From positions 146,209 to 210,208 of IMG/VR virus record IMGVR_UViG_3300035698_022190: a stretch of DNA of 64,000 nt; one strand, written 5' to 3'. This document shows, in pieces, positions 10,702 through 63,009 of this stretch. The position numbers and the translations under genes were made by a program. Positions within the stretch are counted from its first letter, which is position 1. Each line of letters begins with the position of its first letter. The notes beneath the pieces are model-generated. The model did no database searches. It saw nothing but the letters and a program-made list of their open reading frames with translations, and was not told where the DNA came from.

Positions 10702-11114
10702 TGAAGAGCTATATAGTCCATGGAGATAAGATTATATTTGAGCCTATGGCTGGGGCAGCAATAGTTACAGCCCCTCCTGCAGCATTTATTGTTACCAGCA
10801 ACATTGGGGTAGCTATGGGTAGTAAAAAGAATTTAGCAATAGAAGATGATTTAAAAAATGTAAAGGTAAGTGCTACATATATTAGTTCTGCCTTTGTTGG
10901 GGGTACGGGATTAGTTACTTTAATTAATTGGCCCAAAGTATCTAGCAAGACGACTAAGAAAAAGAAGGGGGTACTGACACATGGAGGTAAAGGAAAGTAT
11001 AAACTTAGTGTTGTAACGCCGGCTATCAATCCTTCGGGCGTGGTTGATCCAACACCTATATATAATGGGTCATTTACATCCGTTCCATCACAATTTGTAT
11101 TTACTGAGAAATAA
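10701..11114 (+). CDS. PAAR-like spike tip protein
   Basis: Position after the spike; Gly/Val/Pro-rich, VHGD start. Confidence 0.5.
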   Translation: MKSYIVHGDKIIFEPMAGAAIVTAPPAAFIVTSNIGVAMGSKKNLAIEDDLKNVKVSATYISSAFVGGTGLVTLINWPKVSSKTTKKKKGVLTHGGKGKYKLSVVTPAINPSGVVDPTPIYNGSFTSVPSQFVFTEK

Positions 11115-11209
11115 CTTGACTAAAAGGTCAAACAAGGATATATTTAGGTATAATGAAACAATTAACATCATATAACACGAGCACACGTTCATAAGGCTGG
11201 GAGACGCAA

Positions 11210-36096: not shown

Positions 36097-36556
36097 AGTC
36101 AATGCTGTTTCACATAAAAATTTTTCAGAAATACAAAAAGAAGTTTTAGATCAAACGATTGTTAAGCTCGAAACGGTATTTAATAGTCAAAAATTTAAAG
36201 AACAAGTAGTAAACTTTAAATGTCCTTTAACAGGAAAGGAAGAATTTCTTGAAAATTTAGGACATTCAAATGAACAGTTGTATGACAAGTTGATGAGCGG
36301 AGCCACACTCCACGTAGAAATTGATACCGACCTACCCAGTCGCAGGGTTATCGGATATACATATCCCAAAGGGGTTACAATTTATACATATAAGTGGTGG
36401 TTTGATAAATATGCAAAAAAATATTATGCTGCTCATTTAGCGCATGAATGGTGCCATAAACTAAACTTTGACCATACAGCACGTCGTAAGAAACGGTGGA
36501 AGTATACTGTACCATATATGATAGGAAATATAGTAGAAGAGTTAACTAATGAGTAA
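36089..36556 (+). CDS. Zinc metallopeptidase (HExxH)
   Basis: IGYT, LAHEWCHKLNFDH, VPY.IG. Confidence 0.75.
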   Translation: MFKVNAVSHKNFSEIQKEVLDQTIVKLETVFNSQKFKEQVVNFKCPLTGKEEFLENLGHSNEQLYDKLMSGATLHVEIDTDLPSRRVIGYTYPKGVTIYTYKWWFDKYAKKYYAAHLAHEWCHKLNFDHTARRKKRWKYTVPYMIGNIVEELTNE

Positions 36557-40359: not shown

Positions 40360-41246
40360 TGAAAACTTTAGTTAAATTAGGTTTTGAGGCTGCTAAACCA
40401 CGTACGCGTCTTAGACGTGTCACGGATGTAGGCACAGCGGCCTTTGCTGGGGCCTTAACGTCACTTGTACCCGGAGTCCCTATAGGAACCGGTATAGTAG
40501 CTGGGATAGCTCCTAAGGGCCATAAAACAGAAGTGGCGGCTAAAACAACAGCTGGAGGTATACTTGCCTCAGCACCCGCAGCAATGTATGGTGTGCATAG
40601 GTTAGCTAAAGATGTCAGTAATACTAATAAAGCTGATTATATGCGCTTAATAGATCGCGGACAAGAATTATATAAAGATGTAAAGACCGGGAAAGCAGGT
40701 AAGTGAAAAACGTTAAAGTATATGATGCGTCGAAGTAAAGGGGCAACTAAGAAAATGTATGCAGCCAACATTGCCTTAGGAACAATAGGAACTGGGCTAT
40801 CATATGCTGCAGCAACAAAAAATTATTATAAAAAAGCAGAACTAACTAAGCTTGGTTTCCATCCTGAGTCTTTTACGCAACCATCTCATGAAAAAGATCA
40901 GGCCTTTCTAAATTCTTTTTCGCGTGCGGGGATTAGTGGCAAAACAAGAAAAACTTTAAATAATCCACTGACTTGGGCTTTAGGTGGTATAAGTTTATTT
41001 ATGAATCATAAAAAACGTTCAGATAATCCAGAGTCAATGTGGCCTTATTTAACTGGTGGTTTGTTAGCAGCAATATCAATAAAAAGATGAAGCAACGCAA
41101 GCAAAAGAGAAAAACAAAAATTTGTAAAAGAATATAATGCTACAATGGGCACCACTTTTACTTTAAAGCATCCTAAGATGCAATCACTTTGGAATATGAC
41201 AAATGCCCATGCAAATAGGGTAGACAGGTTTAAAGGTAATGGCTAA
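40359..41246 (+). CDS. Modular basic/hydrophobic protein with KLG/KKA motifs (2 TGA=Trp)
   Basis: Continuous frame to TAA at 41244. Confidence 0.65.
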
Positions 41247-42048
41247 ATTTTTTAAAAAAGCTGAGTATGATCCAACTAAAGTACGTCAGGCCCCTGGCTA
41301 TGATGCCGGAGCTCAATATAAACATAATAGAAACACGCCTACATCACATGCTATTAGACAATTAGGGGCAGAGTGAATTTATAGAAAACCCCCAAAAGGA
41401 GTTTTTAAAGAAAGTAAAATTCCTGTAAATCAGGGATCCCATTTAAAAACAGCCGGGGTATGGGGAAAATTTACTAATGCCTTGTCAGAAGGTTTTAAAG
41501 AAAGCGACGCTGAATTAAAACAAAGTATGAATCATGGTTGAGAGACTTTAAAAGCTCATGGTAGGTATGGTAAGCATTTGAGTAAACATAAATTTTATGT
41601 TTATAAAACGGGTCGAGAGTATGGAACGCCTCGTATTCCTTTATTAAAGCACGACATGTCAAAATTTTTACCAAGTGAATGAGTTCCCTATACTAATTTT
41701 TGAGAAGGCCCTGAGGGAGTTAAAGGTACATCAAAATCTAGAACATTAAAAACTAGATATGGTCTAGCAGCTCCAGCAGTTTACGATCGTTTTCGATCTG
41801 CAGTAGACAAACATTATAGGCGTAATCCGCACCATTATCATAAAATTGGTAGAGAACGAGAACAAGATTTTAACACCAAACTTGAGATGATAGCGGATTG
41901 ATATAGTACAAGTAGGGGCATACACGAGCAAGCCTCAGATAAACCTTTTCCGGGATTTAGAGATTGGTATGGTGGAAGACGAGCGAGTTTAAAGATTGGT
42001 CCTGAAGTCATTGCTTATATTGACAATTATCTTCTCAATTCAAAATAA
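41239..42048 (+). CDS. DUF5662-like HD-type protein absent from the ORF track (5 TGA=Trp)
   Basis: MAKFFKKA leader; HDMSKFLPSE*VPY, HYRRNPHH, EMIAD*. Confidence 0.75.
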
Positions 42049-47214: not shown

Positions 47215-49884
47215 ATGTCGGATAAAAAAACTTTAGAGCTGCGTAGAAGCGATTTTGCGGAGAACTTTTTATACTTAGATGGTAGTTCATTTTCTTTAGA
47301 TGACTATCCACATATGCGTGCAATCTACAATGAGTCTGCAAAAAACATTGTTTTAAAGTTCAGTAGACAGACTGCAAAATCAACCACGTTGGCAAACATA
47401 ATGGTTGCGAACAGTGCGCTTATTCCCCATTTCCGAACACTTTATGTAGCGCCGACCGTTGATCAAACAAAAGTTTTCTCACGAGATCGTGTGTCCCCAG
47501 TATTGGAAACTTCTCCTTTAATGAAGCAACACTATATTAATAGTGCAATGCCTCAAAACGTTTTTATGAAGCAGCTTCTAAATTATAGCAAGATGTACCT
47601 TCGATATGCGCTTCTCTCAGCAGATCACCTCAGAGGATATTGCCAAACGGAGTCAGCTGAATATAATACCTTGCGTGGTTGGTTACCTGTGAATAGACTT
47701 ACAACAGATGATTATGTTTTAACAAAAAATGAAGAAACAGGCGAATTACAATATCAAAAACCTACAGATATTATTATAGACGATTATGATGGACCTATAC
47801 AGATTTACAAAACTCGTGGTAAACCTATTTTAGAAGTTACACCAAAACATCGAATTCACGCATCAATTTTAAAGCAAAAACATGTTGGAGCTCCTTACGG
47901 ATCAAAATGGACTACTGATAATAGATCTTATCAAATGCAAGATAAGAATTTCAGAATGGGTATAGGGGAGCAAGATGAAATCTTTTTTAAAGATGCTTCC
48001 CCTAAATATTTTGAGTTGCCTGGTTTAAAAACTAATATAAAAGCAAATGGGCTTCCCTACGCTAATGGAAAAATTAGAGAGTTTCCTAGTATTAAGTTGC
48101 CTATAAAAGAGTTTATGATTTTTATGGGCTGATGGCTTTCTGAGGGATGAACGAGTTTAGATAAGTGTAACTTAGGTGTAGCACAAGATAAAAAACACAA
48201 TTTAGAATATTGAAATGAAATAAAATCTATTTTTGACAAGTTATTTAAAAATAAATATACACTTGGAAAGGACAATATGTGTTTTAATTTAAATAGTGAA
48301 TGACGCACTCTTTATGAATATCTAAAGCCTTTAGGTAAATCTGGCGATAAGTATATTCCCAGAGAATTATTAACATATATAAAGTATCTTCCTGGCCTTT
48401 TAAATGCACTCTACAAAGGAGATGGCGATAATCCTTCTGTTCAAAAATTAAACCAAAAAGAGTATTTACGTTTAAATACTAAATCTAAAAAATTAGCAGA
48501 CACGACACAAGAAGCATGACTGCGTCTAGGTAAACTTGCAACTATAAACCACAGAGATCGTGAGTTCGGAAGGATATATACTGTTGAAGTGAAAACCTTA
48601 ACATATGTTAATTTTCTTTTTAATAAATATAAAAAAAATAAAGAGACACAATTCGAAGAAATTAAATATAAGGGTAAAATTTATTGTGTAACAGTGCCAA
48701 ACGGGAATTTTGTTACAAGACATGCCGTTACAAAATTACCTTTAGTTACTGGCAACTCAGCTGATTTTAATTTGTTTGACGAGGCACAAGATTTAAAACA
48801 AGATATTATTCCTGTTGTACAGGAAACTATGTCAAGATCCTTATATAAGCGGTCACTATATTCAGGAACACCAAAACGTACTAAAGGCACCTTAGCTGAT
48901 TTGTGGTACATGTCTTCTCAAAATGAATATATGTTAAAGTGTCCGCACTGCAATCATTGAAATCTTTTAGATGAAAAAAATATTGGCCCATACTTTTTAG
49001 TTTGTAATAATCCTCAATGTGAAAAGGAGCTTCGCCCAGAATCAGCACAAGGAGAATGGGTTTCCACCTATTCAAATTTAAGTGACAAACCTAATTTAGA
49101 AGGATACAGGGTTTGTTTATTACATTTTGCAACAGCCCCTTGGGTAAGCTGAGAAAAAGATGTAATGGGCAAAATGAAGACTTACTCAAAAGCTGCCTTT
49201 TATAATGAAGTTCTTGCTTTAGAATATGATCATGGAGTTGCCCCAATTACAAGAAGTGAGGTTATGGCATGTGCAGATACAGATTGGCCCATGCAAGAGG
49301 AGCCCACAGCTTTAGATAAATCTTATAAGTCTGTAATGGGCATTGACTATGGACCTGTAAATTCAACTAACTCTTATACAGTAGTCAGCGTAGTACAGCT
49401 TCGCGGTGATGGAAAATTTTACAATGTTTTTAGTAAAAGATTTGTGGGTAAAGATGCTGATTACGCTTTTATACACGATGAGATACCAAAGCTAATGAAT
49501 AAATGGGATTGTGATATTTTAGCAGCTGACTATGGAATGGGAGAAGCACCAAATAGCGAGATTCAAAAACGTATAGGTAATAAAGCTGTTATTGCTTTCC
49601 AGCACAATGCAGCACAAAAAGATAAAATGCGCTGAAATAAGGCTATGCCGGCATATACGTTAAATAGAAATCAAGCAATGAATGATATTTTTAGTTTAAT
49701 AAAACAACAAAAGATTGTATTCCCAAGATGGGAAGAGTCTCAGACTTTTCTAGAAGATATTTTAAATATTCAAACAGAATATAATGAAGAATTAGGCAAA
49801 AGTAAATATATTAATGTTGGACCAGATGACTTTTTGCACGCAACTTTGTTTGCAATTTTGTCCGCCCAAATGGCGTATGTTTAA
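47215..49884 (+). CDS. terL: Terminase large subunit (GpA-like) with intein (8 TGA=Trp)
   Basis: SRQTAKST Walker A, FDEAQD Walker B, GTP motif, CPHC, MGIDYG nuclease, PDD..HA. Confidence 0.9.
47641..48756 (+). mobile_element. Intein with LAGLIDADG endonuclease in TerL
   Basis: LRGY|CQTE ... YCVTVPNG..TGN|SAD; FMG*WLSEG, ALYKGDG. Confidence 0.88.
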
Positions 49885-49946
49885 CCTAAGTGTAAAAAAA
49901 ATAAAAAACTACTTGACAAAATAAGATAAGGAGACTATATTAAGTT

Positions 49947-50975
49947 ATGTTTACTGCACACGATTTGGACAGTCTGGGCAAAAAACTTTCTCAAGATTAT
50001 ACCGAACATAAGATCGAATTAACAGACAATTTGGCAAAGACGGCTACGGCACAAGGATTAAATCAATATCAGACGAGCCGTGTCGCAGAAGCAGCCAATG
50101 TTGAATCTTATTTAGTATTAATGAAGACGGCAGAAGATAAATATATCGACTTCCCCTTAGCAAATGCTAAAAAAGCTTTCGAACTCAGTCAGGGTCTTGA
50201 AAAAGAAGCCTCATCTGTCGTTTCCAACGATTATCAAAGACCTCTTGTTGAGGTTACTATACCAGAAGTATTCAACAAATTTGCAAGCTTAGAGGGGATA
50301 GAACGATCAGAAGATCAGGCAATTCCTAAAAGTGAAAGTGAATGACGTAAAGAAGCTTCTGATTATAAGGGCACTGTCCAGTTTTTAAAAGATGCCTTAT
50401 ATGAAGCTAGTGCCTCCTTTGAAACAAATTATTTAGATTTAAAGTATCACACAAAACAAGCTATGCTCCAAAATACATCGTTTGCAGATATAAAAAACAT
50501 TGTTTGTGTTGCATCCAATCCAATAGGCGAGCCTCTAAGTGACCAAATTCACACTGATTTGAAAGATGATTTAAAATTTCATGATTTCGAAAAAGAAGCT
50601 GAACACCACACATCTCCAAACCCAGAGTCCAAAATTTTTAAGAGTGCTTTAAAAACAGCCGAAAGTATTAAACGACACGAAGATATAGCGAATGCCATAG
50701 AGCATTACATCAATAAATATGAAACTCTCACGAAAGAAGCTGGTTTCAAAATACCTCAGATTATAAAAAGAGACCCTATTACCAGGACCGGTAAAGCCTT
50801 AAAAGGTTTTCTCAATTTTCCAGCCAATCATCCTATAGGTGCTGTAGCATTACCGGGAATGGTTGGAACTTACTTCTATGGAAAATCAAAAGGTAAAAAA
50901 GAACAGGGCGCTTTCTTAGCACAGGGCTATGCAAAATTAGGTCCTACAAAAAATCAACAAAAAATATTTAGGTAG
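49947..50975 (+). CDS. Head assembly/internal protein with K-x-A motifs (1 TGA=Trp)
   Basis: RVAEAAN; KTAT, KEAS, KEAG; one frame across TGA at 50343. Confidence 0.7.
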
Positions 50976-50984
50976 ATAATCAGT

Positions 50985-51470
50985 ATGATAAATTTGAAAG
51001 ATTTAAAAGGTTATTCTAAAAGTCCATTAGCAGTTGGTGCTATGATGGCGGCCGGCCTAACAATAAGTGCTAAAGCTATTGATGAAATAATTGCTTATGT
51101 AAAAGAGCGAAATATAAAAGCAAAAAGTACAAAATATTATGCAGAAATGTTAAACGCTCATCCAGAATTAAAAAAAGAGAAACCTATTGTAGTAGCACGA
51201 TACTGGGCTTCTCTTTATCATTTTGCTCCTTACATGGCACAAGATCCGTTAGCAGCTGGCGCTTTTATAAGACAGTCTTTAGCTAGAGGTCTTCCAGAAG
51301 AGTTTGGTGGTCCAGCTCCAGATACTTACAGTACTTTAACTGGTATAAATGAAAGTATCTTAAAAGCTAAAGGACAAAGTCCAGCAGGAATGGCGATGAG
51401 TGCTGGTTCTGCACGTGACACATTTGCTAACCAAGTAATTAAAGATTACATGGGTGCTAATAATAATTAA
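50985..51470 (+). CDS. Hypothetical head-module protein
   Basis: FAP.MAQDPLAAGAFIRQ; directly upstream of the protease. Confidence 0.7.
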   Translation: MINLKDLKGYSKSPLAVGAMMAAGLTISAKAIDEIIAYVKERNIKAKSTKYYAEMLNAHPELKKEKPIVVARYWASLYHFAPYMAQDPLAAGAFIRQSLARGLPEEFGGPAPDTYSTLTGINESILKAKGQSPAGMAMSAGSARDTFANQVIKDYMGANNN

Positions 51471-54371
51471 ATGATTGAAAAAACCCTAAATTATATTTAC
51501 GGTGATAATGACACGGAAGTCTTCTCTGTTATGGATAATAACATGGAGAAGCGCGCGTCGTACTCATCAGAGGTTCAAGACTATCTTGATAAGTTAGCTG
51601 AGTCTCCCGATAAGACGTATGCGCTCGTAAACGCATTGTCAGCAGGTGAATATTATGGGTCTAATCGTAATGGTGACTACTTCCCCGAAAAGGCACTAAA
51701 AGATTATCACAAAACATTTGAAGCTTTAGGGCATGTATATACCCACCATGTAAATAAAGATCCAAAGAAATCCTTAGGTTCAGTAAAATTTGCTCATTAT
51801 AATCCAACTATGAAAAGGGTTGAACTGGTTCTAGAATTAGATAATGCTAAAGCTAAGCCAGTTATTGAGCGCCTTGATAAAGGGGAACTGCCAGCAGTCA
51901 GTATGGGTTGCTTTCAAGCTGGTGTAAATATTATACTTAGCGATTTTTCAAAAAAACCCATTGAGGATATTCAAGTTGGCGACGAAGTACTAACACATAC
52001 AGGGGAAATACATAAAGTAACTGAATTGCATCCAAGAGATTATGCGGGAATAATGTATACTATTAATCCTGTGGGTAAATATAGGCCTTCAATTACGGCG
52101 ACCAAAGAGCATCCGTGGCTTGTAATTGAGCCAGACAAGTTTTTTGAAAAAGACGAAAAAGCTCGATTAAGACGAAGAAAAAAACTTTCGTTAGCTGACG
52201 CTGTATGAAAAGTATCTGAAGATTTATCTACACAAGACCACCTTTTAATTCCAAAACCTAAGAACGCGGACGTGATTGACATGCCTGTAGCAAAGGCTAA
52301 GCTTTTAGGGTGGTATTTAGCAGAAGGCCACACACATATTAAAGATAATGGAGTTGAATTTACGGTAAACAGGGCAGACCAAATAGTTAAAGATATAGAC
52401 TCTGTTTTAAAAACCTTAGGCTTACCAGAAACAGTAGTTATGGCACATAATGTTTCTAAAGAAGCTTTACGGCTAATAGTTTTCTCTGCAGATTTAAAAA
52501 AAGATGTTTTATATTATTGTGGAAAGTATAGTCATAAAAAAAGATTACATAGAAAAGTTTTTTATTGGAGTGATGAAGCTAAATTAGCATTTCTAGGTGC
52601 GTATATTTCTGGAGATGGTTTTTTTCACGAAAATCAAGCATATATTAGTTCTTGTAATCGTGAACTTTTAGAACAAATTCAGTGGCTTGGTTTTTCTTTA
52701 GGAATAAACTCAACACTTGGAAAAAATGAACACAAAGCAGGAAATGGTTTTTCTTTTGAAGATACAACAGAGTATATTTTAAGGTTTAGAGGAACACATA
52801 ATAGTATACTATCTAAGTATGCTGAAAAAATTTCAACTGTAAATAAGCAAGCAGTTGGTGGCAAAGGTGGACCTTTTGAATATGAAAATTTTTATCTTTT
52901 AGCCATTGAAGAAATAAAAGGAAATGAATATACAGGTCCTGTATATAATTTTGAAGTAGATGTAGATAATTCTTATGTGGTAGAACAATATGCAGTACAT
53001 AACTGTAGAGTTCCAAAAGATACATGTAGTATATGTGGAAACGAAGCAACAAAAATCGCAAATTATTGCGAACATTTAAAAAACAACATGAACAAAGTAA
53101 TGCCAAATGGTAAAAAGGTTTATGCTATAAATAACCAACCGAAGTTTTTTGACATTAGTGTAGTAACAATCCCAGCCGAAAAGACAGCTAGTTTTATTAA
53201 AAGAATATCTAGTAAAATTAAAGCATCTTTTGCCAAATCAGCAAATGAAATAGATGTCCCATTAACGTGGGCGCAAAGCATTGCAAAAACAGCATCGCTG
53301 GAAACACAAGCAGATATTAAAAAGAAAATAGACGTAAAATTAGATGCGGTTTCTGAAGACCCAAAGAAGTTAATCTTACTGTCACAAAAAAGGTTATCTA
53401 AAGAAACTATTGAAAAGCTATCTGAACATCCATTGGGCGAAGTATTGTCCACTTTAATTGGTTTACGAATAGTACCCGTTAAAGAAGATTTTCAAAAATT
53501 AGCTTTATATAGTATGGGGAAAGCAGAGGGTGCGGAAGAGTTAGCTGAAGCAAAAGTATGTTTTGAAGTTAATCCTAAATTACGTCCTATAATACCTGCA
53601 GACGTTTCTCTTGATTATTTTAATGAAAAAATTGCCGGGTTGTTAATAGAGGATTTGCCTGGAATGGCTTTAACAAAGCCTAATATAATCTCACGCAGCT
53701 TTTATAAAGCAGCACAAGTGGGATTTACAGAGCCAATCGCTACATCGGAGGAATTAAATCAGGCTTTTCCTGAAAAATCCAAACGTGAACGGAGCATGAT
53801 TAGCAAAGTTTTCTTTGGCCAACAAGAAGATCCAAAACTTAATTCTGTTAAAAGCCCAATAATTCCTTTAGGAGTATTGGGTAGTCTATATTACGGGTAT
53901 ATAAAAACATTTAACAATGTTAATACAGGAGAGTTTAAGAAGTTTTTAGCGCGACATCCATGAGTATTTACAGCTATGTTAGGTACCGCAGCCGGTGCGT
54001 CTATATTAGCTCAGAAGCGCGCTCACGGAATACATGCTTTAGATAAGCAGGCAGGATTAGTAGAGAATGCGGGACACGTGATAGGTGGTTTACTTATTAC
54101 AGTTCCAGGTTCTTATTATGCTGCTTCGTTCCCAGAACAAAAAGCACAGCAGGGGATTCCAATCTCATCTAGTCAGAATTTTTTGAGAAAACATCCCGCA
54201 CTTGTTGCTTTAGGCGCGTCCATTCTTGGCGTAACCGGAATTGGAACAGTGACTAAACAAATGAATAAATTAAAAACTTTGAATTCTAACTGACTTAAGT
54301 TTGCCAGCGTTCTAAATCGTTTAGACGAGGAAGCTTTAAATGTTATTTATAAGGATTTAATCATAAACTAA
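51471..54371 (+). CDS. Prohead maturation protease with intein and long C-terminal extension (3 TGA=Trp)
   Basis: NRNGDYFP, HHVN.D, VSMG|C, CSICG, FFDISVV.IPA; upstream of scaffold and capsid. Confidence 0.75.
51909..53003 (+). mobile_element. Intein with LAGLIDADG endonuclease in the prohead protease
   Basis: SMG|CFQAG..PIEDIQVGD.VLTH..T.EHP; LGWYLAEG, LGAYISGDG; VYNFEV..SYVV...VHN|C. Confidence 0.9.
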
Positions 54372-54386
54372 CGGAGGTATTACACA

Positions 54387-54965
54387 ATGCAAAAAGGTGT
54401 AAACATCGATCAAATTTTACTTGAGCTAGAGCAAGAGAAGAAAGCTGAAGATATCTTTAATGATTCCCTTCTAGAAGAGAAAAAGCCAGAAGAAGTTAAA
54501 GTAGAAGTTGAAAAAGAAGTAGAAAAAGAAGCTGAAAAAGAAGTAGAAGCTGAAGTTAAAGTAGAAGCTGAAGTTGAAAAAGAAGTAGAAGCTGAAGTTG
54601 AAAAAGAAGTAGAAGCTGAAGTTAAAGTAGAAGCTGAAGTTGAAAAAGAAGCTGAATTAACTGAAGAAGAAGCTGAAGTAAAAGCTAATCTTGAAAAACA
54701 AGGTCGTTATATGGCAAAGGGATTCTTAGCAGAATTAAATGAAGCCGCTAGTGATACTGTAGAAAAGGTTGCTGAAGAAGCTGAAAAAGAAGTAGAAAAA
54801 GAAGCTGAAAAAGAAGTAGAAGCTGAAGTAGAAGCTGAAGTAGAAGCTGAAGTTGAAAAAGAAGCTGAAGTAACCGAAGAAGAAGAAAAATGGGCAGCAT
54901 TAAGACCAGACCAACGCATTGTTCTGGGTTTATATGACCAATTTTTTCCAACGGAGGAAGAATAA
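54387..54965 (+). CDS. Acidic scaffolding protein with EKEA/EVEA repeats
   Basis: Low-complexity Glu-rich; G..MA.GF motif; position before capsid. Confidence 0.7.
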   Translation: MQKGVNIDQILLELEQEKKAEDIFNDSLLEEKKPEEVKVEVEKEVEKEAEKEVEAEVKVEAEVEKEVEAEVEKEVEAEVKVEAEVEKEAELTEEEAEVKANLEKQGRYMAKGFLAELNEAASDTVEKVAEEAEKEVEKEAEKEVEAEVEAEVEAEVEKEAEVTEEEEKWAALRPDQRIVLGLYDQFFPTEEE

Positions 54966-54968
54966 ATA

Positions 54969-55313
54969 ATGGCTAATCTATTAGAAATATATGATGACAT
55001 GGTTCAAGTTGAGCAAGAACAAGAAGCAGACGTTATCGAAAAAAACGCCGAGGCACAACTAACAACGGATCGCGTAGAAGTATTAGCAAAATATGCTACA
55101 CTTGCAGATAATATGTTAGGTGAAGAATACGGCGATGATTATAAAGAAGAAGATGTTCAAGAGTTAGCTAGCTATTTAATTGAAAATGACTCGGCTATTG
55201 AAGAACAACAAGAAAAAGTTGCTGAATATGTTCAGTTAGGAACAATCATGGCTAAAGCTTTTAAGAAAGAATTAGAAGCAGAAGCCGAAGTAGTAACAGA
55301 GGAAGAAAAATAA
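54969..55313 (+). CDS. Acidic scaffold/core protein
   Basis: EKVA..G.IMAKAF motif shared with the previous gene. Confidence 0.65.
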   Translation: MANLLEIYDDMVQVEQEQEADVIEKNAEAQLTTDRVEVLAKYATLADNMLGEEYGDDYKEEDVQELASYLIENDSAIEEQQEKVAEYVQLGTIMAKAFKKELEAEAEVVTEEEK

Positions 55314-55329
55314 CTCTTCTTTAATTATA

Positions 55330-55689
55330 ATGAGTGAACAAAGTTTAGAAAAACGAGCTGCTCTTGCTATTAGAGCTTTACAAACAGATTTGCAAGAAAG
55401 TGAACTAAGACAGCAAGAGCAGACCGCTCAGCTAGAGCACCAAAAACGTGCTCAAAAGCTGGCTACGTATTTTTTAAAAATTGGCCACATAACATTAGAA
55501 AAATTTGAGGACACAGTTGCGGACTTTTGCGAGCAACCCTCAGAACAATTAGATGTGATTGAAAAAGCAGCGGCTATGACGGAAAATGGAAATGGATCTT
55601 TTTTAGGCAAAGTTGCCGAAGATGTCGCATCTATATCACTGTCTCCAGAGGATCGCTTTATACAAAGAGCGTTGCTGGATGACGATTAA
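55330..55689 (+). CDS. Coiled-coil scaffold-like protein
   Basis: EKRA and EKAA motifs; position. Confidence 0.65.
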   Translation: MSEQSLEKRAALAIRALQTDLQESELRQQEQTAQLEHQKRAQKLATYFLKIGHITLEKFEDTVADFCEQPSEQLDVIEKAAAMTENGNGSFLGKVAEDVASISLSPEDRFIQRALLDDD

Positions 55690-55719
55690 TAGTAATAACA
55701 TTACTGGAGGAAAGTAATA

Positions 55720-56163
55720 ATGCTTAGAATGTTAACAAACTTGAATTTGGTACACCGTTTTGACGTAACAGCCGCAGCCGGCTTGTTGGCGTCAGGTTAT
55801 ACCGGAACATGGGTTGGTGGAAATACCACGACATTGGACTATATTGCCTCAGCAGGCGATTGGGCAATGGGTGTTGTATGGAACGAATCTAATCGTGACG
55901 GTACTGCGGGATTCACACCAGATACAAGAGCAGTAGCATCAGGTGGAACAGGTAAATTAACCGCTGTATACGGAAAATTCCGTGCACTAACAGATCAGTT
56001 TACAGGGACCCCCGCAGTTGGAGCCGCATTATATGCAGGCACTGACGGTACATTAAGTACCACATCAGGCAGCGGTATAATCGTTGCTTATTGTACAAAA
56101 GCAAGTCATTCAATTACTCACTTACTAACCGCCCATACTGTGATCGAATACGTTACAGTTTAA
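55720..56163 (+). CDS. Capsid decoration/cement protein
   Basis: Gly/Thr-rich, VG..LY...DG.L; immediately before the major capsid gene. Confidence 0.6.
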   Translation: MLRMLTNLNLVHRFDVTAAAGLLASGYTGTWVGGNTTTLDYIASAGDWAMGVVWNESNRDGTAGFTPDTRAVASGGTGKLTAVYGKFRALTDQFTGTPAVGAALYAGTDGTLSTTSGSGIIVAYCTKASHSITHLLTAHTVIEYVTV

Positions 56164-56179
56164 TAGGAGAAAAATAATA

Positions 56180-57076
56180 ATGGAAAACTTATCAGCAAGT
56201 ACTGTTAATGAGCTATTCATCCAGAAATTAGATTCTCCGGATGGATTAGAAAAAGTAGCAATGGAAGGATCTGCCTTTATTAGACAAAAGTTACGTGAAG
56301 TATCTTTTGCAAGAAAGGTTATTCAACCTCAGTATGTAACAAAAGCCGATTTAACGCGTTCAGTTAATCACGATGGTCTTGTAAAGATTGTTGATATTGA
56401 ACCTGATTCAAAAGCTATGACCGTTAACTTCCGTGGTGAACCCGACTGGAACTATATTGAAGGACCTCGTTATGAGATTCCTTTCTTTATGATCAGTTCA
56501 GAGGATTTCCAAAAAACCGAAGAAGAACTATTAGCTTACGAAATGCCTCTAACCGAGGTTATTGAAAAGAACTCAGTATTAGATATTCAAAAAATCGAAG
56601 ACACCTCGTTTTTAGCCCAAGTAGATGCAGCTGTTGAAACAGAAGCCAGCCAACTAGCGGAAGCTTATGGCACAGGTGGAATTATCAACAAAGAGGATTT
56701 CAAAGCTCTATTTGATGTGTTAGATGGTAATGAGTTACGTACCGAAATTATCTTAATGGATACAAAAATGTTTAATCGTCTGTTTTTATATGACGCTACA
56801 ACAGTCGGCGACGGCGTTGGATCAGAAACCCATGTAAATGGTTATTCTTATTCAACATTGTTCGGTCGTAGACTAATTGTATCTAATAAAGTTAGTTTAC
56901 TTGACAATAAAATCTACGGCTTCACAGCCCAAGAATTTATGGGTCAATTCTTAGTATTGAATGATGTAAAATTCTGGATCGAAAAGAAAAAGAATATTAT
57001 CTCATTTGCAGCCTATGAAAGTGTAGGTATGGGAATTGGTAATACCAAGTCCTGTGCTAGACTAACCTTAAGTTAG
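56180..57076 (+). CDS. Major capsid protein (HK97 fold)
   Basis: IRQKLRE.SFARK, IQK.ED..F, YE.VG..IGN; strong RBS; terminator follows. Confidence 0.8.
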   Translation: MENLSASTVNELFIQKLDSPDGLEKVAMEGSAFIRQKLREVSFARKVIQPQYVTKADLTRSVNHDGLVKIVDIEPDSKAMTVNFRGEPDWNYIEGPRYEIPFFMISSEDFQKTEEELLAYEMPLTEVIEKNSVLDIQKIEDTSFLAQVDAAVETEASQLAEAYGTGGIINKEDFKALFDVLDGNELRTEIILMDTKMFNRLFLYDATTVGDGVGSETHVNGYSYSTLFGRRLIVSNKVSLLDNKIYGFTAQEFMGQFLVLNDVKFWIEKKKNIISFAAYESVGMGIGNTKSCARLTLS

Positions 57077-57094
57077 ATAATAGTTACAGACTAT

Positions 57095-57127
57095 AAAAAA
57101 GGGACTTTTAACGAAGTCCCTTTTTTG
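57095..57127 (+). terminator. Intrinsic terminator after the capsid gene
   Basis: AAGGGACTT-TTAACG-AAGTCCCTTTTTTT. Confidence 0.85.
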
Positions 57128-57202
57128 TTTAAATGCTTGACTACTTTTCGGTAAAAGCTTATATTTAAGTATAATATAATTTAAATTTATAGGAAGATTA
57201 AA

Positions 57203-57685
57203 ATGGCCGACCCAATAGTACCAACGACATATCAAGCAAAAGTAGATCGTTTAAGACGATGGCTTGGAGATAATACAACTTTAAATCAATTATTAGGTGC
57301 TCAAGAAAGCTCAGATGTATTTTTATATGAGTGCATTGATGATGCTCTAGATAAAATTAATTATACCCCACCTAGCGACGGGACTACCTATACAATTTCT
57401 GATTTTCCCTCTTGGTCAACTTTAAAATTAGGAGCTACTTTACAAGTTTTAGTTGGAAAAGGAATTTTATCAGCACGCAATACCTTAACCTACAATGATA
57501 CGGGCGGCGTAACAATCCATGATTTTGACACTTATGGTCGATATATTAATTTCTTCAATGTTTTAGTTAATGAGTATAGAAGAGCTGTGCAAAATATGAA
57601 AATCGGCGCTAATATAGACGCTGTATATGGCGGAGTTGCTTCTGAATATTCTACTTTAATAGACGTGGACGAATACGATATTTAA
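57203..57685 (+). CDS. Head-tail adaptor (neck) protein
   Basis: LRRWLGD, RNTLTYND.GG; position after capsid. Confidence 0.6.
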   Translation: MADPIVPTTYQAKVDRLRRWLGDNTTLNQLLGAQESSDVFLYECIDDALDKINYTPPSDGTTYTISDFPSWSTLKLGATLQVLVGKGILSARNTLTYNDTGGVTIHDFDTYGRYINFFNVLVNEYRRAVQNMKIGANIDAVYGGVASEYSTLIDVDEYDI

Positions 57686-58890
57686 TGCTTATTTTAAACA
57701 GCCTTGATATCACATCTTATGATGTAAATAAATTAACTGTAAGTTGGGATCTTGATACCACCCCAGAAGCTTTGTCGGGATATTCTCTGAGTCTTTACAG
57801 ATCTGAAAATCCAGGTATTTCTGGAATTGTTGGTTTTGATTTAGTAGAATCGGGAATTGCTGCAACTACTTATCATTATGATGATTTTTCTGTTTCAGGA
57901 ATATGGGACCCACTAAGAACTTGGTATTATAAGATAAAATTTACAGAACTTGCTACTTTAGAAGAATCTGTACAACCAACTACACCCGCTTTTCGTAAAG
58001 CAACTACCACAGATAGAGCAGCAATTGAAATAGTTAGACGTAAAGGTATTGCCTTAGAAAGATATTCAGGCCGTGACTTTTTTGTTATTAAAAAACGTAC
58101 ATATGGAACACATTGTAGTGAGTGCTGGGATGCTACTTTACAAAGAATTGTAAATGATTCTTGCCCTATTTGTAAGGGTACTGGATGGGTAGACGGATAC
58201 TTTGGATCCATTTACTTAAAAGGAATGCTAAACCCAGCTCCGAAATATAACCAAATTACGATGTTTGGTGAATGGATGCCACACGATGCTTTATTTACGA
58301 TGTTAAATTTTCCGCCTATAAGAACTAGAGATATTATTATAGATGATCGGAACCAGAGGTGGATTGTAAAACAAATTAGAAAAACCGAAAAACTTGGTTA
58401 TACAATTGAACACAACGCACAATGTGCACTAATTTCATTTGACGATCAAATTTATGATTTGGAAAAAGATACTTTAGAAATTGCTTTAGCAGTTTTACAA
58501 ACTGACGTGGTTCAGGCCGCAGACCAACAAAGTGTATATGCGGTTGTGAAACAATTACTAGATAGCTATTGGTATGAATCAGATCAAGGAGAAACGGCCG
58601 TAGCGGTTCAATGGGTAAATAGTTTAAAAAGAGTAATCGGGAGCTACACGACAGCAAATACAGCAACTTTTGAAAATGTCAATATTACTGATATTTTTCA
58701 CAGCTATGGTACTGCAACCAATTTAAGTATGTGGTCTGTTTTTATTAATAGGATGGTAGCTACGAAGCAAACAATTACTTCTATTACAGATTCAGGTTCA
58801 AATATTGTAATAACTTTTAACAGTAATTTAGAATATGATTTAGTATCTGGAGATGAAATTGAGCTTTGGGGGCCAATTGATTCCTTATAA
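57685..58890 (+). CDS. Head closure/neck protein: FN3-like, zinc finger and duplicated C-terminal domain
   Basis: CSECWD..CPICKGTGW..GY; C-terminus paralogous to the next gene. Confidence 0.6.
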   Translation: MLILNSLDITSYDVNKLTVSWDLDTTPEALSGYSLSLYRSENPGISGIVGFDLVESGIAATTYHYDDFSVSGIWDPLRTWYYKIKFTELATLEESVQPTTPAFRKATTTDRAAIEIVRRKGIALERYSGRDFFVIKKRTYGTHCSECWDATLQRIVNDSCPICKGTGWVDGYFGSIYLKGMLNPAPKYNQITMFGEWMPHDALFTMLNFPPIRTRDIIIDDRNQRWIVKQIRKTEKLGYTIEHNAQCALISFDDQIYDLEKDTLEIALAVLQTDVVQAADQQSVYAVVKQLLDSYWYESDQGETAVAVQWVNSLKRVIGSYTTANTATFENVNITDIFHSYGTATNLSMWSVFINRMVATKQTITSITDSGSNIVITFNSNLEYDLVSGDEIELWGPIDSL

Positions 58891-59258: not shown

Positions 59259-60218
59259 ATGCAAACACTTTTATTTATTACCCCGCACCTTTCAACGGGC
59301 GGTTTACCACAGTATCTGCTTAAGAAGATTGAAACTTTAAAAAACGATTTTGTTGTTTATGTTCTAGAATACGCAAATGTAACAACAAGTTATCGCGTTC
59401 AGAGAGATCAGATAGAAGCCTTACTAGGCGATAGGTTTATATCACTGCCTAACGAAAATAGGTCTGCATCCTTTATTGAAGCTGTTAAACAAGTCGATCC
59501 CGACATTGTTCATTTAGAAGAACATCCCGAATGTTTCTGGTATTTCTATGAAGATGCGCCATTCATCTGGTTATATAGAAATGAACGAAAATATACAATT
59601 TTAGAAACCTGTCACAACTCTACTTTCAATGTCTCACAAAAAAAGTTTTTACCAGATCGGTTTATTTTTGTGAGCCAAGGACAAGCAGATCGATATAAAG
59701 AGCTTGATGTCCCATTTAATGTAGTAGAGTACCCAATTGAAAAACAAACTAGAATTTATTCTAAAAAAGAGGCTTGCATCAAGTTAGGAATTGACCCTCA
59801 AAAGAAAAATGCAATTACTGTTGGGCTGTTTACTTCAGGAAAAAATCAGGGGGCTATTTGGCCTATTGCCAAAGACATGATTAATGAAAAACTTCATTTT
59901 CATTTTGTTGGTAACTTAGCTGTCAATTTTGAAAAATACTGGAAACCCTTACTAAATGATTTACCAAATAATTGTACAGTATGGGGTGAAAGAACTGATG
60001 TAGATATATTTTATCAGGCCGCAGATATACTGTTGTTCCCCTCTATTCTGGAAACTAATCCCCTTGTTGTACGTGAAGCCCTATCTTGGGACCTTCCAGT
60101 GCTTATGCGTAACTTACTTATATATAATGATGCATATACATCATTAAAAAATGTTTATTATTTTGAAGCGGATATCGCAAAAGATATAAATCAAATAAAA
60201 CAAATCTTACAAAATTAA
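59259..60218 (+). CDS. GT4-type (GT-B) glycosyltransferase
   Basis: PHLSTGGLPQY, VGLFT.GKNQ, FPS..ETNPLV.REAL. Confidence 0.85.
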   Translation: MQTLLFITPHLSTGGLPQYLLKKIETLKNDFVVYVLEYANVTTSYRVQRDQIEALLGDRFISLPNENRSASFIEAVKQVDPDIVHLEEHPECFWYFYEDAPFIWLYRNERKYTILETCHNSTFNVSQKKFLPDRFIFVSQGQADRYKELDVPFNVVEYPIEKQTRIYSKKEACIKLGIDPQKKNAITVGLFTSGKNQGAIWPIAKDMINEKLHFHFVGNLAVNFEKYWKPLLNDLPNNCTVWGERTDVDIFYQAADILLFPSILETNPLVVREALSWDLPVLMRNLLIYNDAYTSLKNVYYFEADIAKDINQIKQILQN

Positions 60219-60219
60219 T

Positions 60220-63009
60220 ATGAAACATGAACTAAAAACTGCTTATAAAAGTACGAACAAAACTGAACGAAAAATAACTCTAAAATCAGCAGACATATTC
60301 TGTAATTTTTCTTTTATAGGAGGACCTAGAGTAACCTTAGTGGGAACTGGTATTAAAAAGTATAGAGTAACCTTTATAGATTTAGATAAAAATAAAATAG
60401 TGTTTGCTACTGAAATCGCAGCAGGAGAATGGGCATCCGCTAATACAAAATATTTTGTAAATTGGAAGATTGATGTATACGACGGTAGTACGTTAATTGA
60501 TTCGCATACTTTAAATTTAAAAAATAAGAATGTTTATATTCAATTTAATAGTAGTGCTCTTGGAGATACTCTCGCGTGGATTCCTTATATGGACAAATTT
60601 AAAGAAAAACATGACTGTAATTTATTTGTATCTACATTTAAAAATAATTTATTTAATAAACGTTATGTTGACTTTACACTCGTAGAGCCAGGTACACCTG
60701 TTGGGGATATTTATGCTATTTATAATATAGGTGTTTTTAGTGATTTAAATAAATCTAAAGTAGATCCCCGCACAGTTTCTTTACAAAGACTTGCAACAAT
60801 TATTCTTGGTCTCCCAGACGGAGAAGTGCAGGCACGAGTAAACCCTGTTGTGAGCCCCAGACCCATTGAAGAAAAGTATGTTTGTATAGCTCCATATGCA
60901 ACTGCCCAAGCTAAACATTGGAATAATGTTATAGGGTGGCAAGCAGTTGTTAATTATTTAAATAAGAACGGCTATAAAGTACTTCACATATCCAGCCAAG
61001 GAAGCGGTTATATGGATAACCCTAAGATAACAGGAACTGAGTATGTTGGAAACCTTTCATTAAAAGCACTAATGCCTTATATTTATCATGCTGAGGCTGT
61101 AATCGGCGTGAGTTCCGGGTTATCATGGCTCTCTTGGGCTTTAAAGCAAAAAACAATTATGATCTCTGGCTTTACAGAAGCCTGGTATGAGTTTTCTAAA
61201 AATTGTCTTAGAGTAACTGCTCCTAATGTCTGTACCGGGTGTTTTAATGACAAAGAGATTGATTTTGATAAAGGTGACTGGAATTGGTGTCCTAGACATA
61301 AAGGCACAGATAGGCAGTTTGAATGCTCTAAACAAATTGATTTTGTTAAAGTTTTACAAGCTTTTAAGGATCGCCAGAAGCTTACCTTTGAGTTCCCCAA
61401 AGGAAAAGAAAAAGATTTTGAGTATCTTTGGAACGAAATATGGAATAGAAAAGAATATTATCATGAAGAATGTCACATAGAAAAAAACGATGTTGTTGTT
61501 GATATAGGAGCAAACATAGGTGTATTTAGTGCGTGGGCCTTAGATCAAGGTGCTAAGCAGGTCTATTCGGTAGAGCCTGATATGCTTAATTATAAATCAT
61601 TGCTGGAAAACATACCAATAGGTTATAAATCTAATATTGCTATATCAAATAAAACGGGTATAGTAGACTTATATGTTGATGGAACAATAGGCGGTCATTC
61701 TATTCTTACACCACCAGAAGGCCATCCCACACAAACGGGGGACACTTATAAAGTAAAAACAAAAAGTTTAAAAGATTACTTTGCTACAAATAATTTAAAA
61801 CATGTAGACTTTTTAAAAGTGGATACGGAAGGAGCAGAAGTGGATATTCTTGCTGACTTAAATGATCTAGATACAACCATAAATAAATTGGCGCTGGAAT
61901 TCCATCACCCACTACATTCCGATGAAGTTTTTAATTCCTTTATTTCTAATTTAGAAAAATATTTTAATAAAGTTCATTTTAATCGAGGACATTATGAGTC
62001 TTTAGTATCTGCTTGGGATAGAAAAGAAAAGATAAAAATTAAAAGTATGGTGTCTGAAAATGGTCCAGTTTTAGTAGTAGGATCGCCAGCTATGGGCGAT
62101 TCTCTTTGTGCTACACCAGTTTTAAATAAACTATTTAAAGCTTATCAAGAGGTTATAACAGTATTTAGTTATGTCCCTGAGATTTTTACAAATAATCCAA
62201 GGGTAAAAGAGGTTTTTAATTTACATGAATATGAGGGGCAAAAATTGAATGATAAGTTAAGTAAATACCCAAGAAAATATGTGCATGAAACTTTTGTTGA
62301 TATATTTGATTCTAAAAATATGGTACATAACCTAACGGATATTCGACAATACCATGCCTCTTTTTTAGGGTTTTCTTTGCTACCAAATGAAATGACTTGC
62401 AATTTTTATCCTGAAAAAGATAGTAATTTAGATTTACCTGAAAAATATGTAGTACTTCATCCGGCAGTTACTTGGGACTCAAGAACTTGAGGTAGGCAAC
62501 AATGGCAAGAATTAGCTGACACTTTAGCTACCCAAGACATAGCCAGCGTTTTAATTGGAAAGGAAACTTCTGAAATATTGGCCGATAATAAAGGAACTCT
62601 AAATAAACCTTTAATGAGCTTAGATTTAAAAAAGGGCAAGGAGTATATAAATAAAACCTCCCTTTCTGAAACGTGGCACATCTTAAACAAAGCTGTTGCA
62701 GTTGTTACGATGGATTCAGGGATATTACATTTAGCAGGCACAACTAATACCCATATTATACAATTAGGAAGCTCTATTAATCCATTATTAAGAGCTCCAT
62801 ACAGGGGAGGTACACAAAGGTATAAATACTCTTATATACCCGGTAAATGTGATATATTTTGTGGTTCAAATATGTCTTATGGATTGGCAGAACATCAAGA
62901 TATAACAGGGGTTCCACTAATTTCTGAATGTTTAGAAAATAAACCAACATTTGAATGCCATCCGACTGTAAAAAATGTTGTAAATGAACTTAAAAAGGTG
63001 TATATTTAA
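60220..63009 (+). CDS. Autotransporter O-heptosyltransferase (Aah/TibC-like) + FkbM methyltransferase + GT9 domain (1 TGA=Trp)
   Basis: ALGDTLAW, SSGLSWL.W, C.GC..W.WCP..FECS; DIGANIG, LKVDTEGAE; MGD, WDSRT*, DSGILHLA. Confidence 0.85.

What the first reader, a model, noticed from the sequence alone, without database searches (positions are those of the whole stretch)
47215..57076. TGA codons gate assembly enzymes and cargo but spare high-copy structural proteins
Seen: TerL has 8 TGAs, the protease 3, the ATP-grasp polyprotein 8 and the DUF5662-like gene 5. Capsid, cement, scaffolds, spike, the 11210 protein, peptidase C1 and the 57685 neck protein use only TGG, several despite many Trp. Inference: partial read-through could act as a timing or stoichiometry checkpoint for maturation and packaging. 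Alternative: selection against an inefficient codon in highly expressed genes.
Basis: partly seen in the sequence, partly recalled or inferred. Interest (0 to 1): 0.65.

Follow-up and report, generated by a model that had tools for sequence, protein, structure and literature searches.

The report
Capsid and tail-sheath genes avoid recoded TGA
This 210-kb phage reads TGA as tryptophan in its late genes through its own unusual tRNA, and across the phage family the most abundant virion proteins avoid that codon, which looks like ordinary selection against a costly codon rather than a checkpoint on the packaging enzymes.

Summary
Third-position A/G composition does not explain it.

TGA means Trp. 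Window TGA codons align with W in standard-code relatives as often as TGG codons do.

The genome uses two codes. Minus-strand early genes still use TGA as a stop. Plus-strand late genes carry 119 internal TGA codons. A conserved, atypical tRNA(UCA) is present in recoded relatives and absent from a standard-code one.

In 19 recoded relatives, the capsid decoration, major capsid and scaffold-like genes hold 1 TGA in 58 Trp codons, against 233 of 630 in neighbouring genes (P=2e-10). Tail sheath plus tube hold 2 of 48.

TerL and the protease-like gene sit at the neighbourhood average. Their Trp columns switch freely between TGA and TGG across relatives, and TerL has no TGA in 10 of 27 recoded relatives. 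There is therefore no conserved gate.

Several TGG-only genes in the window are enzymes, such as glycosyltransferases and a C1 peptidase, and 57685 is TGA-rich in relatives.

The checkpoint idea is not. Late-gene recoding itself is already published.

The parts
47215..49884 (+). Large terminase (gpA-type ATPase plus nuclease), 889 aa, interrupted by an intein. It has 8 TGA (codons 306, 312, 333, 363, 435, 582, 646, 807) and 9 TGG.
   Evidence: PF05876 and phrog_675 E=8e-66. TGA 582/646/807 align with W in 70, 79 and 67 of 80 intein-less homologs.
47635..48726 (+). Approximate intein with a LAGLIDADG homing endonuclease inside TerL (about aa 141-504). It holds 5 TGA and 3 TGG.
   Evidence: PF14528 LAGLIDADG_3 at aa 395-454. 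The TerL match is split into 34-109 and 505-882. Boundaries are approximate.
49913..49941 (+). Promoter-like site TTGACA-17-TATATT in the TerL/49947 gap; putative start of the head operon.
   Evidence: 11 of 12 consensus matches. This is a consensus match only.
49947..50975 (+). Unknown 342-aa protein, first gene of the putative head operon. TGA 1 of 1 Trp codon.
   Evidence: No Pfam or PHROG hit. Conserved in 74 related loci.
50985..51470 (+). Unknown 161-aa protein. Window 0/1 TGA; 27 distinct recoded relatives 3/29.
51471..54371 (+). 966-aa head-assembly protein (weak prohead-protease signal plus a long helical C-terminal part), interrupted by a Hint+LAGLIDADG intein at about aa 147-511 (window about 51909-53003). 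TGA at codons 246, 831, 941; 5 TGG.
   Evidence: PF14528, PF05203, PF14890; phrog_18299 'head maturation protease' E=1.8e-5 at aa 518-573. C-extein model pLDDT 68, mostly helical. TGA 831 aligns with W in 33 standard-code relatives.
54387..54965 (+). Acidic, Glu-rich (33% E) repeat protein, scaffold-like. Trp codons: 0 TGA, 1 TGG. Highest phage-typical codon bias of the plus-strand genes (0.62).
   Evidence: Translation and composition; bias.
54969..55313 (+). Acidic helical scaffold-like protein with no Trp in the window; 0/11 TGA in recoded relatives.
55330..55689 (+). Acidic scaffold-like protein with no Trp.
55720..56163 (+). Capsid decoration (cement) protein, 147 aa. Window 0/3 TGA; 0/43 in 21 recoded relatives.
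   Evidence: AF2 pLDDT 84. Top Foldseek hits are all phage capsid decoration or stabilising proteins (BB1 8pkh, T1 9kzj_I, TW1 5wk1_K; TM 0.5-0.59). Counts.
56180..57076 (+). Major capsid protein, 298 aa. Window 0/2 TGA; 3/24 in recoded relatives, all three in one clade.
   Evidence: Profile hit to PDB 6wkk_A 'Gp27 major capsid protein' E=2.7e-15; phrog_2522. Counts.
57093..57128 (+). Intrinsic-terminator hairpin with a T run directly after the capsid gene.
   Evidence: dG -19 kcal/mol, z=-6.3 against shuffles.
57137..57165 (+). Promoter-like site TTGACT-17-TATATT ahead of 57203.
   Evidence: 10 of 12 consensus matches.
57685..58890 (+). Window 0/11 TGA, but 50/116 in 19 of the 27 distinct recoded relatives that hold it.
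   Evidence: No family hit. Counts.
36549..39200 (+).
   Evidence: No Pfam, PHROG or PDB match. Counts.
41239..42048 (+). DUF5662 protein; 5 TGA, 2 TGG.
   Evidence: PF18907 E=8e-16. TGA 46 and 221 align with W in standard-code relatives.
28795..29601 (+). Papain-family (C1) peptidase, an enzyme; 0 TGA, 8 TGG.
   Evidence: PF00112 E=1e-17.
59259..63009 (+). Glycosyltransferase (GT1, 0/6 TGA), then a 929-aa GT9 + FkbM-methyltransferase protein (1/18 TGA). The orthologs of the latter hold 0/32 in one recoded relative and 22/31 in another.
8552..13390 (+). Functions are unknown. Orthologs in recoded relatives carry TGA: 8552 1/3 and 3/6, 11210 0/8 and 4/12 (G001 and G002 respectively).
   Evidence: No family hit. 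Counts.

Best explanation
The window is the late (plus-strand) part of a 210-kb tailed phage that runs two genetic codes. Early, minus-strand genes are written in the standard code and about two dozen of them still end in TGA. Late, plus-strand genes use TGA as a tryptophan codon. It is presumably read by a phage tRNA(UCA) that lies on the late strand just upstream of the endolysin gene.

Once TGA is readable it behaves as a synonymous but costly Trp codon. AT-biased mutation pushes TGG towards TGA, and selection pushes back in proportion to how much protein a gene must deliver. As a result, the capsid shell proteins (major capsid, decoration, scaffold-like) and the tail sheath and tube keep TGG almost exclusively across the whole phage family. 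Low-copy proteins (terminase, protease-like protein, baseplate and giant tail proteins, inteins) drift to 30-60% TGA, with codon states that flip between relatives.

Part of the TGG-only set in this particular genome consists of accessory enzymes with atypical codon usage, or of lineage-specific states. These are not high-copy proteins.

Shown here: TGA=Trp; the strand split; the family-wide depletion; the absence of a conserved TGA in TerL. Inferred: that the tRNA is charged with Trp; that the cost of TGA is incomplete suppression; that expression level is the selective variable.
For: TGA=Trp. TerL TGA codons align with W in 67-79 of 80 homologs. Across genes, window TGA positions align with W in 253/377 residues of standard-code relatives, against 627/1018 for TGG positions.

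Dual code. Minus-strand genes have 28 TGA in the last 20 codons and 9 internal; plus-strand genes have 7 and 119. The standard-code relative G003 has 60 terminal and 13 internal.

tRNA(UCA). It is conserved in three recoded genomes, with 11 of 28 pairs compensatory, and is absent from G003. The genome has no RF or TrpRS gene.

Shell depletion. 1/58 against 233/630; 19.6 expected; P=2e-10; sign test 17/17; MH z=-5.3. TerL z=-0.3.

Sheath plus tube. 2/48 against 37/120, Fisher P=9e-5.

Not composition. A3/(A3+G3) is 0.68-0.83 in all families and 0.75-0.77 on both strands.

General under-use of TGA. The TGA share is 31% on the plus strand, against 77% A-ending in other two-fold purine codons.

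Same predicted operon. The TGA-bearing protease gene and the TGA-free shell genes share a promoter-like site, 0-30 nt gaps and a terminator after the MCP gene.

Conservation. The TGA share falls with protein conservation.

Labile codon states. TerL Trp columns are 17-44% TGA in relatives. 60220 orthologs hold 0/32 against 22/31.
Against: - There are no expression or proteome data: only DNA runs hold this phage. 'High copy' is inferred from protein identity.
- A putative portal (weak PHROG hit) and its neighbouring block are also TGA-free in three genomes (0/17 for the portal-like gene) although portals are low-copy.
- Within this genome, phage-typical codon bias correlates positively, not negatively, with TGA share.
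- MCP and the decoration protein show only average codon bias.
- Residual heterogeneity among typical core late genes remains unexplained (P<1e-4), with weak clustering of like genes along the genome.
- The related loci are not fully independent samples.
Confidence: 0.68

Rival explanations
1. TGA codons are kept in TerL, the protease and cargo genes as a partial read-through gate that delays or throttles these proteins relative to the shell, acting as a maturation and packaging checkpoint.
For: TGA-bearing and TGA-free genes sit side by side in one predicted operon, so codon content could in principle set relative yields. TerL is TGA-rich for such a conserved protein: 25/51 over three genomes. 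Borges et al. proposed recoding as a regulator of late and lysis genes.
Against: TerL is not enriched relative to its neighbours in 19 relatives (z=-0.3) and the protease-like gene is not significantly enriched. TerL has zero TGA in 10 of 27 recoded relatives. No Trp column is fixed as TGA. There is no positional bias of TGA within genes. A 2588-aa gene carries 32 TGA, which would yield almost no protein unless suppression is efficient. Enzymes such as the glycosyltransferases and the C1 peptidase are TGG-only.
Confidence: 0.1
2. Timing class. The TGA-free plus-strand genes (shell, sheath, portal block, accessory enzymes) are those that must be translatable before, or independently of, the code switch. 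TGA marks only the latest genes.
For: TGA-rich and TGA-poor genes are weakly clustered along the genome (adjacent-gene autocorrelation P=0.02 in G000 and 0.001 in G002). The block after the tRNA gene (genome 66.5-71.9 kb) is TGA-free in three genomes. Early genes are TGA-free as sense codons, as published for other recoded phages.
Against: The shell genes share a predicted operon with the TGA-bearing 49947 and 51471 genes. Making capsid shell and sheath before the other late proteins has no obvious rationale. Autocorrelation is absent in G001.
Confidence: 0.15
3. History rather than selection. TGG-only genes are recent arrivals, or were recently exchanged by recombination with standard-code relatives or hosts, and have not yet accumulated TGA.
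For: Low-bias, higher-GC3 plus-strand genes, mostly accessory enzymes without orthologs in relatives, hold 8/76 TGA against 113/307 in typical genes. Recoded and standard-code phages are interleaved on the TerL tree: 7 changes, at least 3 forced. Gene-level TGA content flips between relatives.
Against: This cannot explain the shell and sheath genes. They are core, vertically conserved and TGA-free in every recoded lineage sampled, while their neighbours reach 37-45%. The closest relative, L001, is closest for every gene, so no mosaic signal was seen.
Confidence: 0.3
4. Chance or local base composition. The per-gene TGA share is a uniform binomial, or simply follows AT content.
For: GC3 explains a small part (beta -0.47 per SD, P=0.0014). 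Inside 47215-57076 alone the contrast is not significant (P=0.066).
Against: Permutation tests give P<=1e-4 at every level. Heterogeneity remains after covariates. The A3 share is equal across families and strands. The pattern is replicated in relatives.
Confidence: 0.02

Closest known systems
Late-gene stop-codon recoding in phages: TGA to Trp (code 4) or TAG to Gln (code 15). Ivanova et al. 2014 (as cited in PMC7886860); Yutin et al. 2021 (PMC7886860); Borges et al. (bioRxiv 10.1101/2021.08.26.457843); Peters et al. 2022 (PMC9523058).
   Same: In-frame TGA sits at conserved Trp positions in structural genes. Early genes are compatible with the standard code. The phage encodes a suppressor tRNA next to a lysis gene. 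Close relatives use the standard code, the genome has low GC, and a homing endonuclease carries recoded codons.
   Different: The habitat is salt-lake and marine rather than gut. There is no RF1 or TrpRS 'code-change module'. The suppressor tRNA has a long variable arm and an extended D stem. The papers I read tested for families that prefer the recoded codon. They do not describe a family-wide depletion in capsid shell and tail sheath genes, and in crAss-like phages the MCP does carry recoded stops.
Translational selection on synonymous codons in highly expressed genes (general codon-usage theory; from my own knowledge).
   Same: A disfavoured synonymous codon is purged from the most heavily translated genes, tolerated in low-expression genes and independent of local base composition.
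   Different: Here the disfavoured codon is a reassigned stop. Its cost would be termination and truncated products rather than slow decoding. Expression was not measured.
Programmed UGA read-through that sets stoichiometry, for example the Q-beta A1 minor coat protein (from my own knowledge).
   Different: In that system a single leaky stop at a conserved position separates a functional short product from an extension. Here there are many TGA inside conserved catalytic domains, their positions are not conserved, and no functional truncated product is expected.

Membership tests
Code-4 (TGA=Trp) late-gene recoded phage | In-frame TGA aligns with conserved Trp in homologs that use the standard code | tested here: met
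   253 of 377 aligned residues are W, the same rate as for TGG positions.
Code-4 (TGA=Trp) late-gene recoded phage | Sense TGA is confined to late structural and lysis modules; early genes are readable in the standard code | tested here: met
   Plus strand 119 internal TGA, minus strand 9. Minus-strand TGA codons cluster in the last 20 codons, as real stops do.
Code-4 (TGA=Trp) late-gene recoded phage | A phage-encoded suppressor tRNA with anticodon UCA | tested here: met
   Genome 65786-65883 (+). Homologs are present in two recoded relatives and absent from a standard-code relative. The fold is supported by covariation. It is atypical: Rfam tRNA 24 bits, tRNA-Sec 32.5 bits, both below threshold.
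Code-4 (TGA=Trp) late-gene recoded phage | Trp is actually inserted at TGA in the proteins | not testable with these tools
   This needs proteomics. No RNA or protein data exist for this phage.
   TerL is TGA-free in 10 of 27 recoded relatives. Every TerL Trp column is a TGA/TGG mix.
   TerL MH z=-0.3; 51471 z=+1.5, not significant.
   Indirect only. A 2588-aa gene with 32 TGA argues for efficient suppression. Under-use of TGA relative to other A-ending codons argues for some cost.
Translational selection against a costly codon in high-copy proteins | The codon is depleted in the most abundant virion proteins, and this is replicated in independent lineages | tested here: met
   Shell 1/58 against 233/630. 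Sheath plus tube 2/48 against 37/120.
Translational selection against a costly codon in high-copy proteins | The depletion is not explained by local base composition | tested here: met
   The A3 share is 0.68-0.83 in all families.
Translational selection against a costly codon in high-copy proteins | Depleted genes are measurably the most highly expressed | not testable with these tools
   No RNA runs hold the phage. Copy number is inferred from protein identity.

The most novel reading that the evidence does not exclude
In dual-code phages the number of recoded TGA codons per gene may be a heritable dial for protein yield. Each TGA would cost a fixed fraction of product. Shell and sheath genes would then be held at zero, while terminase, protease, baseplate and giant proteins are set low, so that virion stoichiometry is partly written in the Trp codons. 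The atypical long-armed tRNA(UCA) next to the endolysin gene would set the exchange rate.
Probability: 0.12. Interest if true: 0.7.

Novelty: new member of a known kind. Interest (0 to 1): 0.4.

Why it matters
Late-gene stop-codon recoding in phages is established, and its proposed role is timing of late and lysis genes. This case adds evidence on the cost side. Within one phage family that has switched code several times, the reassigned codon is almost absent from the proteins made in the largest numbers, yet it drifts freely elsewhere. That implies suppression is not free, and it gives a simple, testable rule for where recoded codons can accumulate. It also cautions against reading regulatory design into the TGA content of any single gene, since TerL, 57685 and 60220 flip state between relatives. 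For annotation, the early genes of this genome must be called with TGA as a stop and the late genes with TGA as Trp.

Tried and rejected
- My first greedy code-4 ORF caller over-extended N-termini and inflated the TGA counts. I replaced it with a codon log-odds caller. TGA codons in the last 20 codons were excluded from the sense-codon counts from then on.
- Selenocysteine or serine as the meaning of TGA, suggested by the tRNA's Sec-like shape, was rejected. Homologs show W, or F/Y/H, at TGA positions.
- Inteins as the sole home of TGA were rejected. Inteins hold 6/13 and exteins 5/12.
- A mosaic origin of TGG-only genes found no support. L001 is the nearest relative for every gene.
- An N-terminal 'early gate' position for TGA was rejected (KS P=0.28).
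- The base after TGA differs from that after TGG (more A, fewer C; P=5e-4). I could not interpret this.
- Direct BLAST of the tRNA against relatives found nothing. Infernal found the homologs.
- PDB sequence searches for 36549 and the 51471 C-extein gave nothing. The 51471 C-extein model is of low confidence and was not fold-searched.
- Homologs of the C1 peptidase carry no taxonomy, so the idea of a donor could not be tested.
- The search for RNA-seq runs found DNA runs only.
- No search tool was given a joined extein sequence; exteins were searched separately by reference. In one local script the TerL N-terminal 140 residues and the C-extein were placed in one row of a MAFFT alignment, solely to map columns.

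Full report
**What the window is.** The window is bases 146209-210208 of a single 210,208-bp IMG/VR virus record. CheckV rates the record 100% complete and its GC content is 36.7%. Only DNA runs from salt-lake and marine metagenomes hold this sequence. The genome has two gene blocks by strand.
- Minus-strand genes form a long early-looking block.
- Plus-strand genes include the head module (window 47-57 kb), a tail sheath (genome 5511-7118, phrog_2839 E=1e-9), a baseplate wedge protein (genome 48478-51534), an endolysin/amidase (genome 65901-66503) and a 2019-aa RNA-polymerase-beta-like protein.

**The code.**
- Read with table 11, TerL and many other plus-strand genes break at TGA. Read with table 4 they are whole.
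- TerL TGA codons 582, 646 and 807 align with W in 70, 79 and 67 of 80 intein-less homologs.
- Over all window late genes, TGA positions align with W in 253 of 377 residues of standard-code relatives. The rate for TGG positions is 627 of 1018, and the minority residues are F, Y and L.
- TGA therefore encodes Trp, and TGA-encoded positions are as conserved as TGG-encoded ones.

**Two codes in one genome.**
- With coding-potential gene calls, minus-strand genes carry 28 TGA within their last 20 codons and only 9 elsewhere. Plus-strand genes carry 7 and 119.
- A standard-code relative put through the same pipeline shows 60 terminal and 13 internal.
- TGA therefore still ends about two dozen early genes and is a sense codon only on the late strand.
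- A-ending versus G-ending use in other two-fold purine codons is the same on both strands (75% and 77%).
- This is the pattern already published for recoded phages.

**The likely decoder.**
- ARAGORN finds a 98-nt tRNA with anticodon UCA at genome 65786-65883 on the late strand, directly upstream of the endolysin gene.
- It scores below threshold for both the Rfam tRNA and tRNA-Sec models.
- Homologs exist in two recoded relatives of about 205-210 kb and not in a 204-kb standard-code relative.
- The three copies share the CUUCAAA anticodon loop, a long variable arm, a 5-6-bp D stem, G73 and an encoded CCA. Eleven of 28 consensus pairs show compensatory changes.
- The acceptor stem and loop resemble tRNA-Trp. 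That it is charged with Trp is my inference.
- The genome has no release-factor or TrpRS gene.

**Checking the observation.**
- Per-gene TGA:TGG is not binomial. All genes give P=5e-5 and the plus strand gives P=5e-5. The window late block (44/140 over 36 genes) gives P=1e-4.
- GC3 explains a little (P=0.0014), but heterogeneity survives the covariates.
- Inside 47215-57076 alone the contrast is weak (11/25 against 0/6, P=0.066), because the shell genes have almost no Trp.
- The labels are only partly right.
  - 55720 is a decoration protein. The AF2 model has pLDDT 84, and all top structural matches are capsid decoration or cement proteins.
  - 56180 is the major capsid protein (PDB 6wkk_A, E=2.7e-15).
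  - 54387, 54969 and 55330 are acidic, helical and scaffold-like.
  - 36549 has no ATP-grasp or any other match, and 57685 has no 'neck' support.
  - Many TGG-only genes are enzymes: C1 peptidase, GT1, a GT9+FkbM methyltransferase, methyltransferase 15490, sulfotransferase-like genes and an ADP-ribosylglycohydrolase+GDSL protein.
- TerL and the protease-like gene each contain an intein with a LAGLIDADG endonuclease. These hold 6 of their 11 TGA.

**Relatives decide the interpretation.**
- A TerL profile retrieved 79 related loci. Thirty-three of them (27 distinct) carry in-frame TGA in conserved late genes, and about 43 have none.
- On the TerL tree the two states are interleaved, with 7 changes of which at least 3 are forced.
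- In 19 representative recoded loci the shell genes hold 1 TGA among 58 Trp codons, against 233 of 630 in neighbouring late genes. From locus-specific rates 19.6 would be expected (P=2e-10). In all 17 informative loci the shell fraction is the lower one, and the Mantel-Haenszel z is -5.3.
- The decoration gene alone is 0/33 (0/43 over the 21 of the 27 distinct loci that hold the gene).
- TerL is average (z=-0.3) and the protease-like gene is not significantly above average (z=+1.5).
- 57685 and 46179, which are TGG-only in the window, are TGA-rich in relatives (50/116 and 52/124).
- TerL lacks TGA altogether in 10 of 27 recoded relatives, and each of its conserved Trp columns is 17-44% TGA.
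- A-ending codon use is the same in all these families.

**A second, independent test.** It used the tail sheath and the adjacent tube-sized gene (genome 7130-7759; the tube role is inferred from size and position, with no family hit) in seven recoded lineages. These hold 2/48 TGA against 37/120 in neighbours. Fisher P=9e-5, or 2e-6 without this genome.

**Operon context.** A promoter-like site (11/12 matches) lies before 49947. The gaps from 49947 to the capsid gene are 0-30 nt. A strong terminator hairpin follows the capsid gene, and another promoter-like site follows that. The TGA-bearing protease-like gene and the TGA-free shell genes therefore probably share one transcript. This points to selection at the level of translation rather than of transcription timing. 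It is an inference from sequence only.

**Other correlates.**
- Across the three recoded genomes the TGA share falls with protein conservation: 49%, 37%, 24%, and then 32% in the top bin, which TerL's 25/51 dominates.
- In this genome, genes with atypical codon usage, mostly accessory enzymes, are nearly TGA-free (8/76 against 113/307). This fits recent acquisition or a different expression class.
- Like genes cluster weakly along the genome.
- A putative portal block is also TGA-free. The copy-number model does not explain this.
- TGA is generally under-used (31%) relative to other A-ending codons (77%).
- A 2588-aa gene carries 32 TGA, so suppression must be efficient even if it is not free.

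**Conclusion.** TGA is a usable but costly Trp codon in late genes. It is purged from the highest-copy virion proteins and drifts in low-copy ones. I found no sign of a conserved gate on TerL or the protease-like gene. Late-gene recoding, suppressor tRNAs and the timing hypothesis are published. The family-wide depletion in shell and sheath genes is not mentioned in the papers I read, and crAss-like phages do carry recoded stops in their MCP.

Noticed in passing
genome 65786-65883 (+), outside the window (L080:1487-1584); homologs at L105:10650-10746 and L094:16160-16258: A tRNA(UCA) of 97-99 nt with a long variable arm, a 5-6-bp D stem, G73 and an encoded CCA. It is conserved in three recoded genomes and absent from a standard-code relative. 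ARAGORN labels it 'SeC', and it scores below the Rfam thresholds. A class-II-like shape for a tRNA that must insert Trp is unusual. It lies directly upstream of an amidase/endolysin gene.
   Followed up: partly
window 47635-48726 and about 51909-53003 (+): Two inteins with LAGLIDADG homing endonucleases, one in TerL and one in the protease-like head gene. Some relatives, both recoded and standard-code, carry them too (full-length alignments).
   Followed up: partly
minus-strand genes genome-wide, e.g. window 1322-1618, 19362-19901, 22622-22849, 25403-25660 (-): About 22-28 early genes appear to end in TGA, with a TAA or TAG a few codons downstream. After the code switch these proteins would gain short C-terminal extensions.
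   Followed up: partly
window 2349-2414 (-): A tRNA-like gene (Rfam tRNA 41.6 bits) that ARAGORN misses. Its anticodon arm seems to have a 5-bp stem and a 6-nt loop (ACAAAC), so no anticodon can be assigned. It overlaps the start of ORF 1960-2421.
   Followed up: no
genome 95539-95943 (-), outside the window: A phage-encoded tmRNA (Rfam RF00023, 108.5 bits, E=1.5e-44) next to the array of about 28 tRNA genes at 97-108 kb. [quoted passage not shown]
   Followed up: partly
relatives G001 (115365-115439, -) and G002 (105393-105469, -): Both recoded relatives also carry a tRNA with anticodon CUA (an amber suppressor). This genome has none. I did not check whether TAG is also read through in those phages.
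   Followed up: no
genome 56632-64398 (+), outside the window: A giant 2588-aa ORF with 32 TGA and 18 TGG, at the end of a baseplate/tail module of very large, fast-evolving proteins. It is the most TGA-dense part of the genome.
   Followed up: no
window 63399-64000 (+), running into genome 1-206: A protein with collagen triple-helix repeats (PF01391, E=1e-10) that crosses the end of the record. The record is therefore a circular permutation cut inside a late gene.
   Followed up: no
L001-L079 (TerL tree): Recoded and standard-code phages of this family are interleaved on the TerL tree (7 changes, at least 3 forced by strongly supported branches). The code has therefore been switched repeatedly over short distances.
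   Followed up: partly
window 15490-18147 and 59259-63009 (+): A set of sugar- and methyl-transfer enzymes sits on the late strand and is almost TGA-free: a methyltransferase, two sulfotransferase-like proteins, a GT1, and a GT9+FkbM methyltransferase+TibC-like protein. They may modify virion or host surface glycans.
   Followed up: no
plus-strand genes of G000, G001 and G002: The base following sense TGA is A more often and C less often than the base following TGG (37% against 27% A; 10% against 18% C; chi-square P=5e-4).
   Followed up: no
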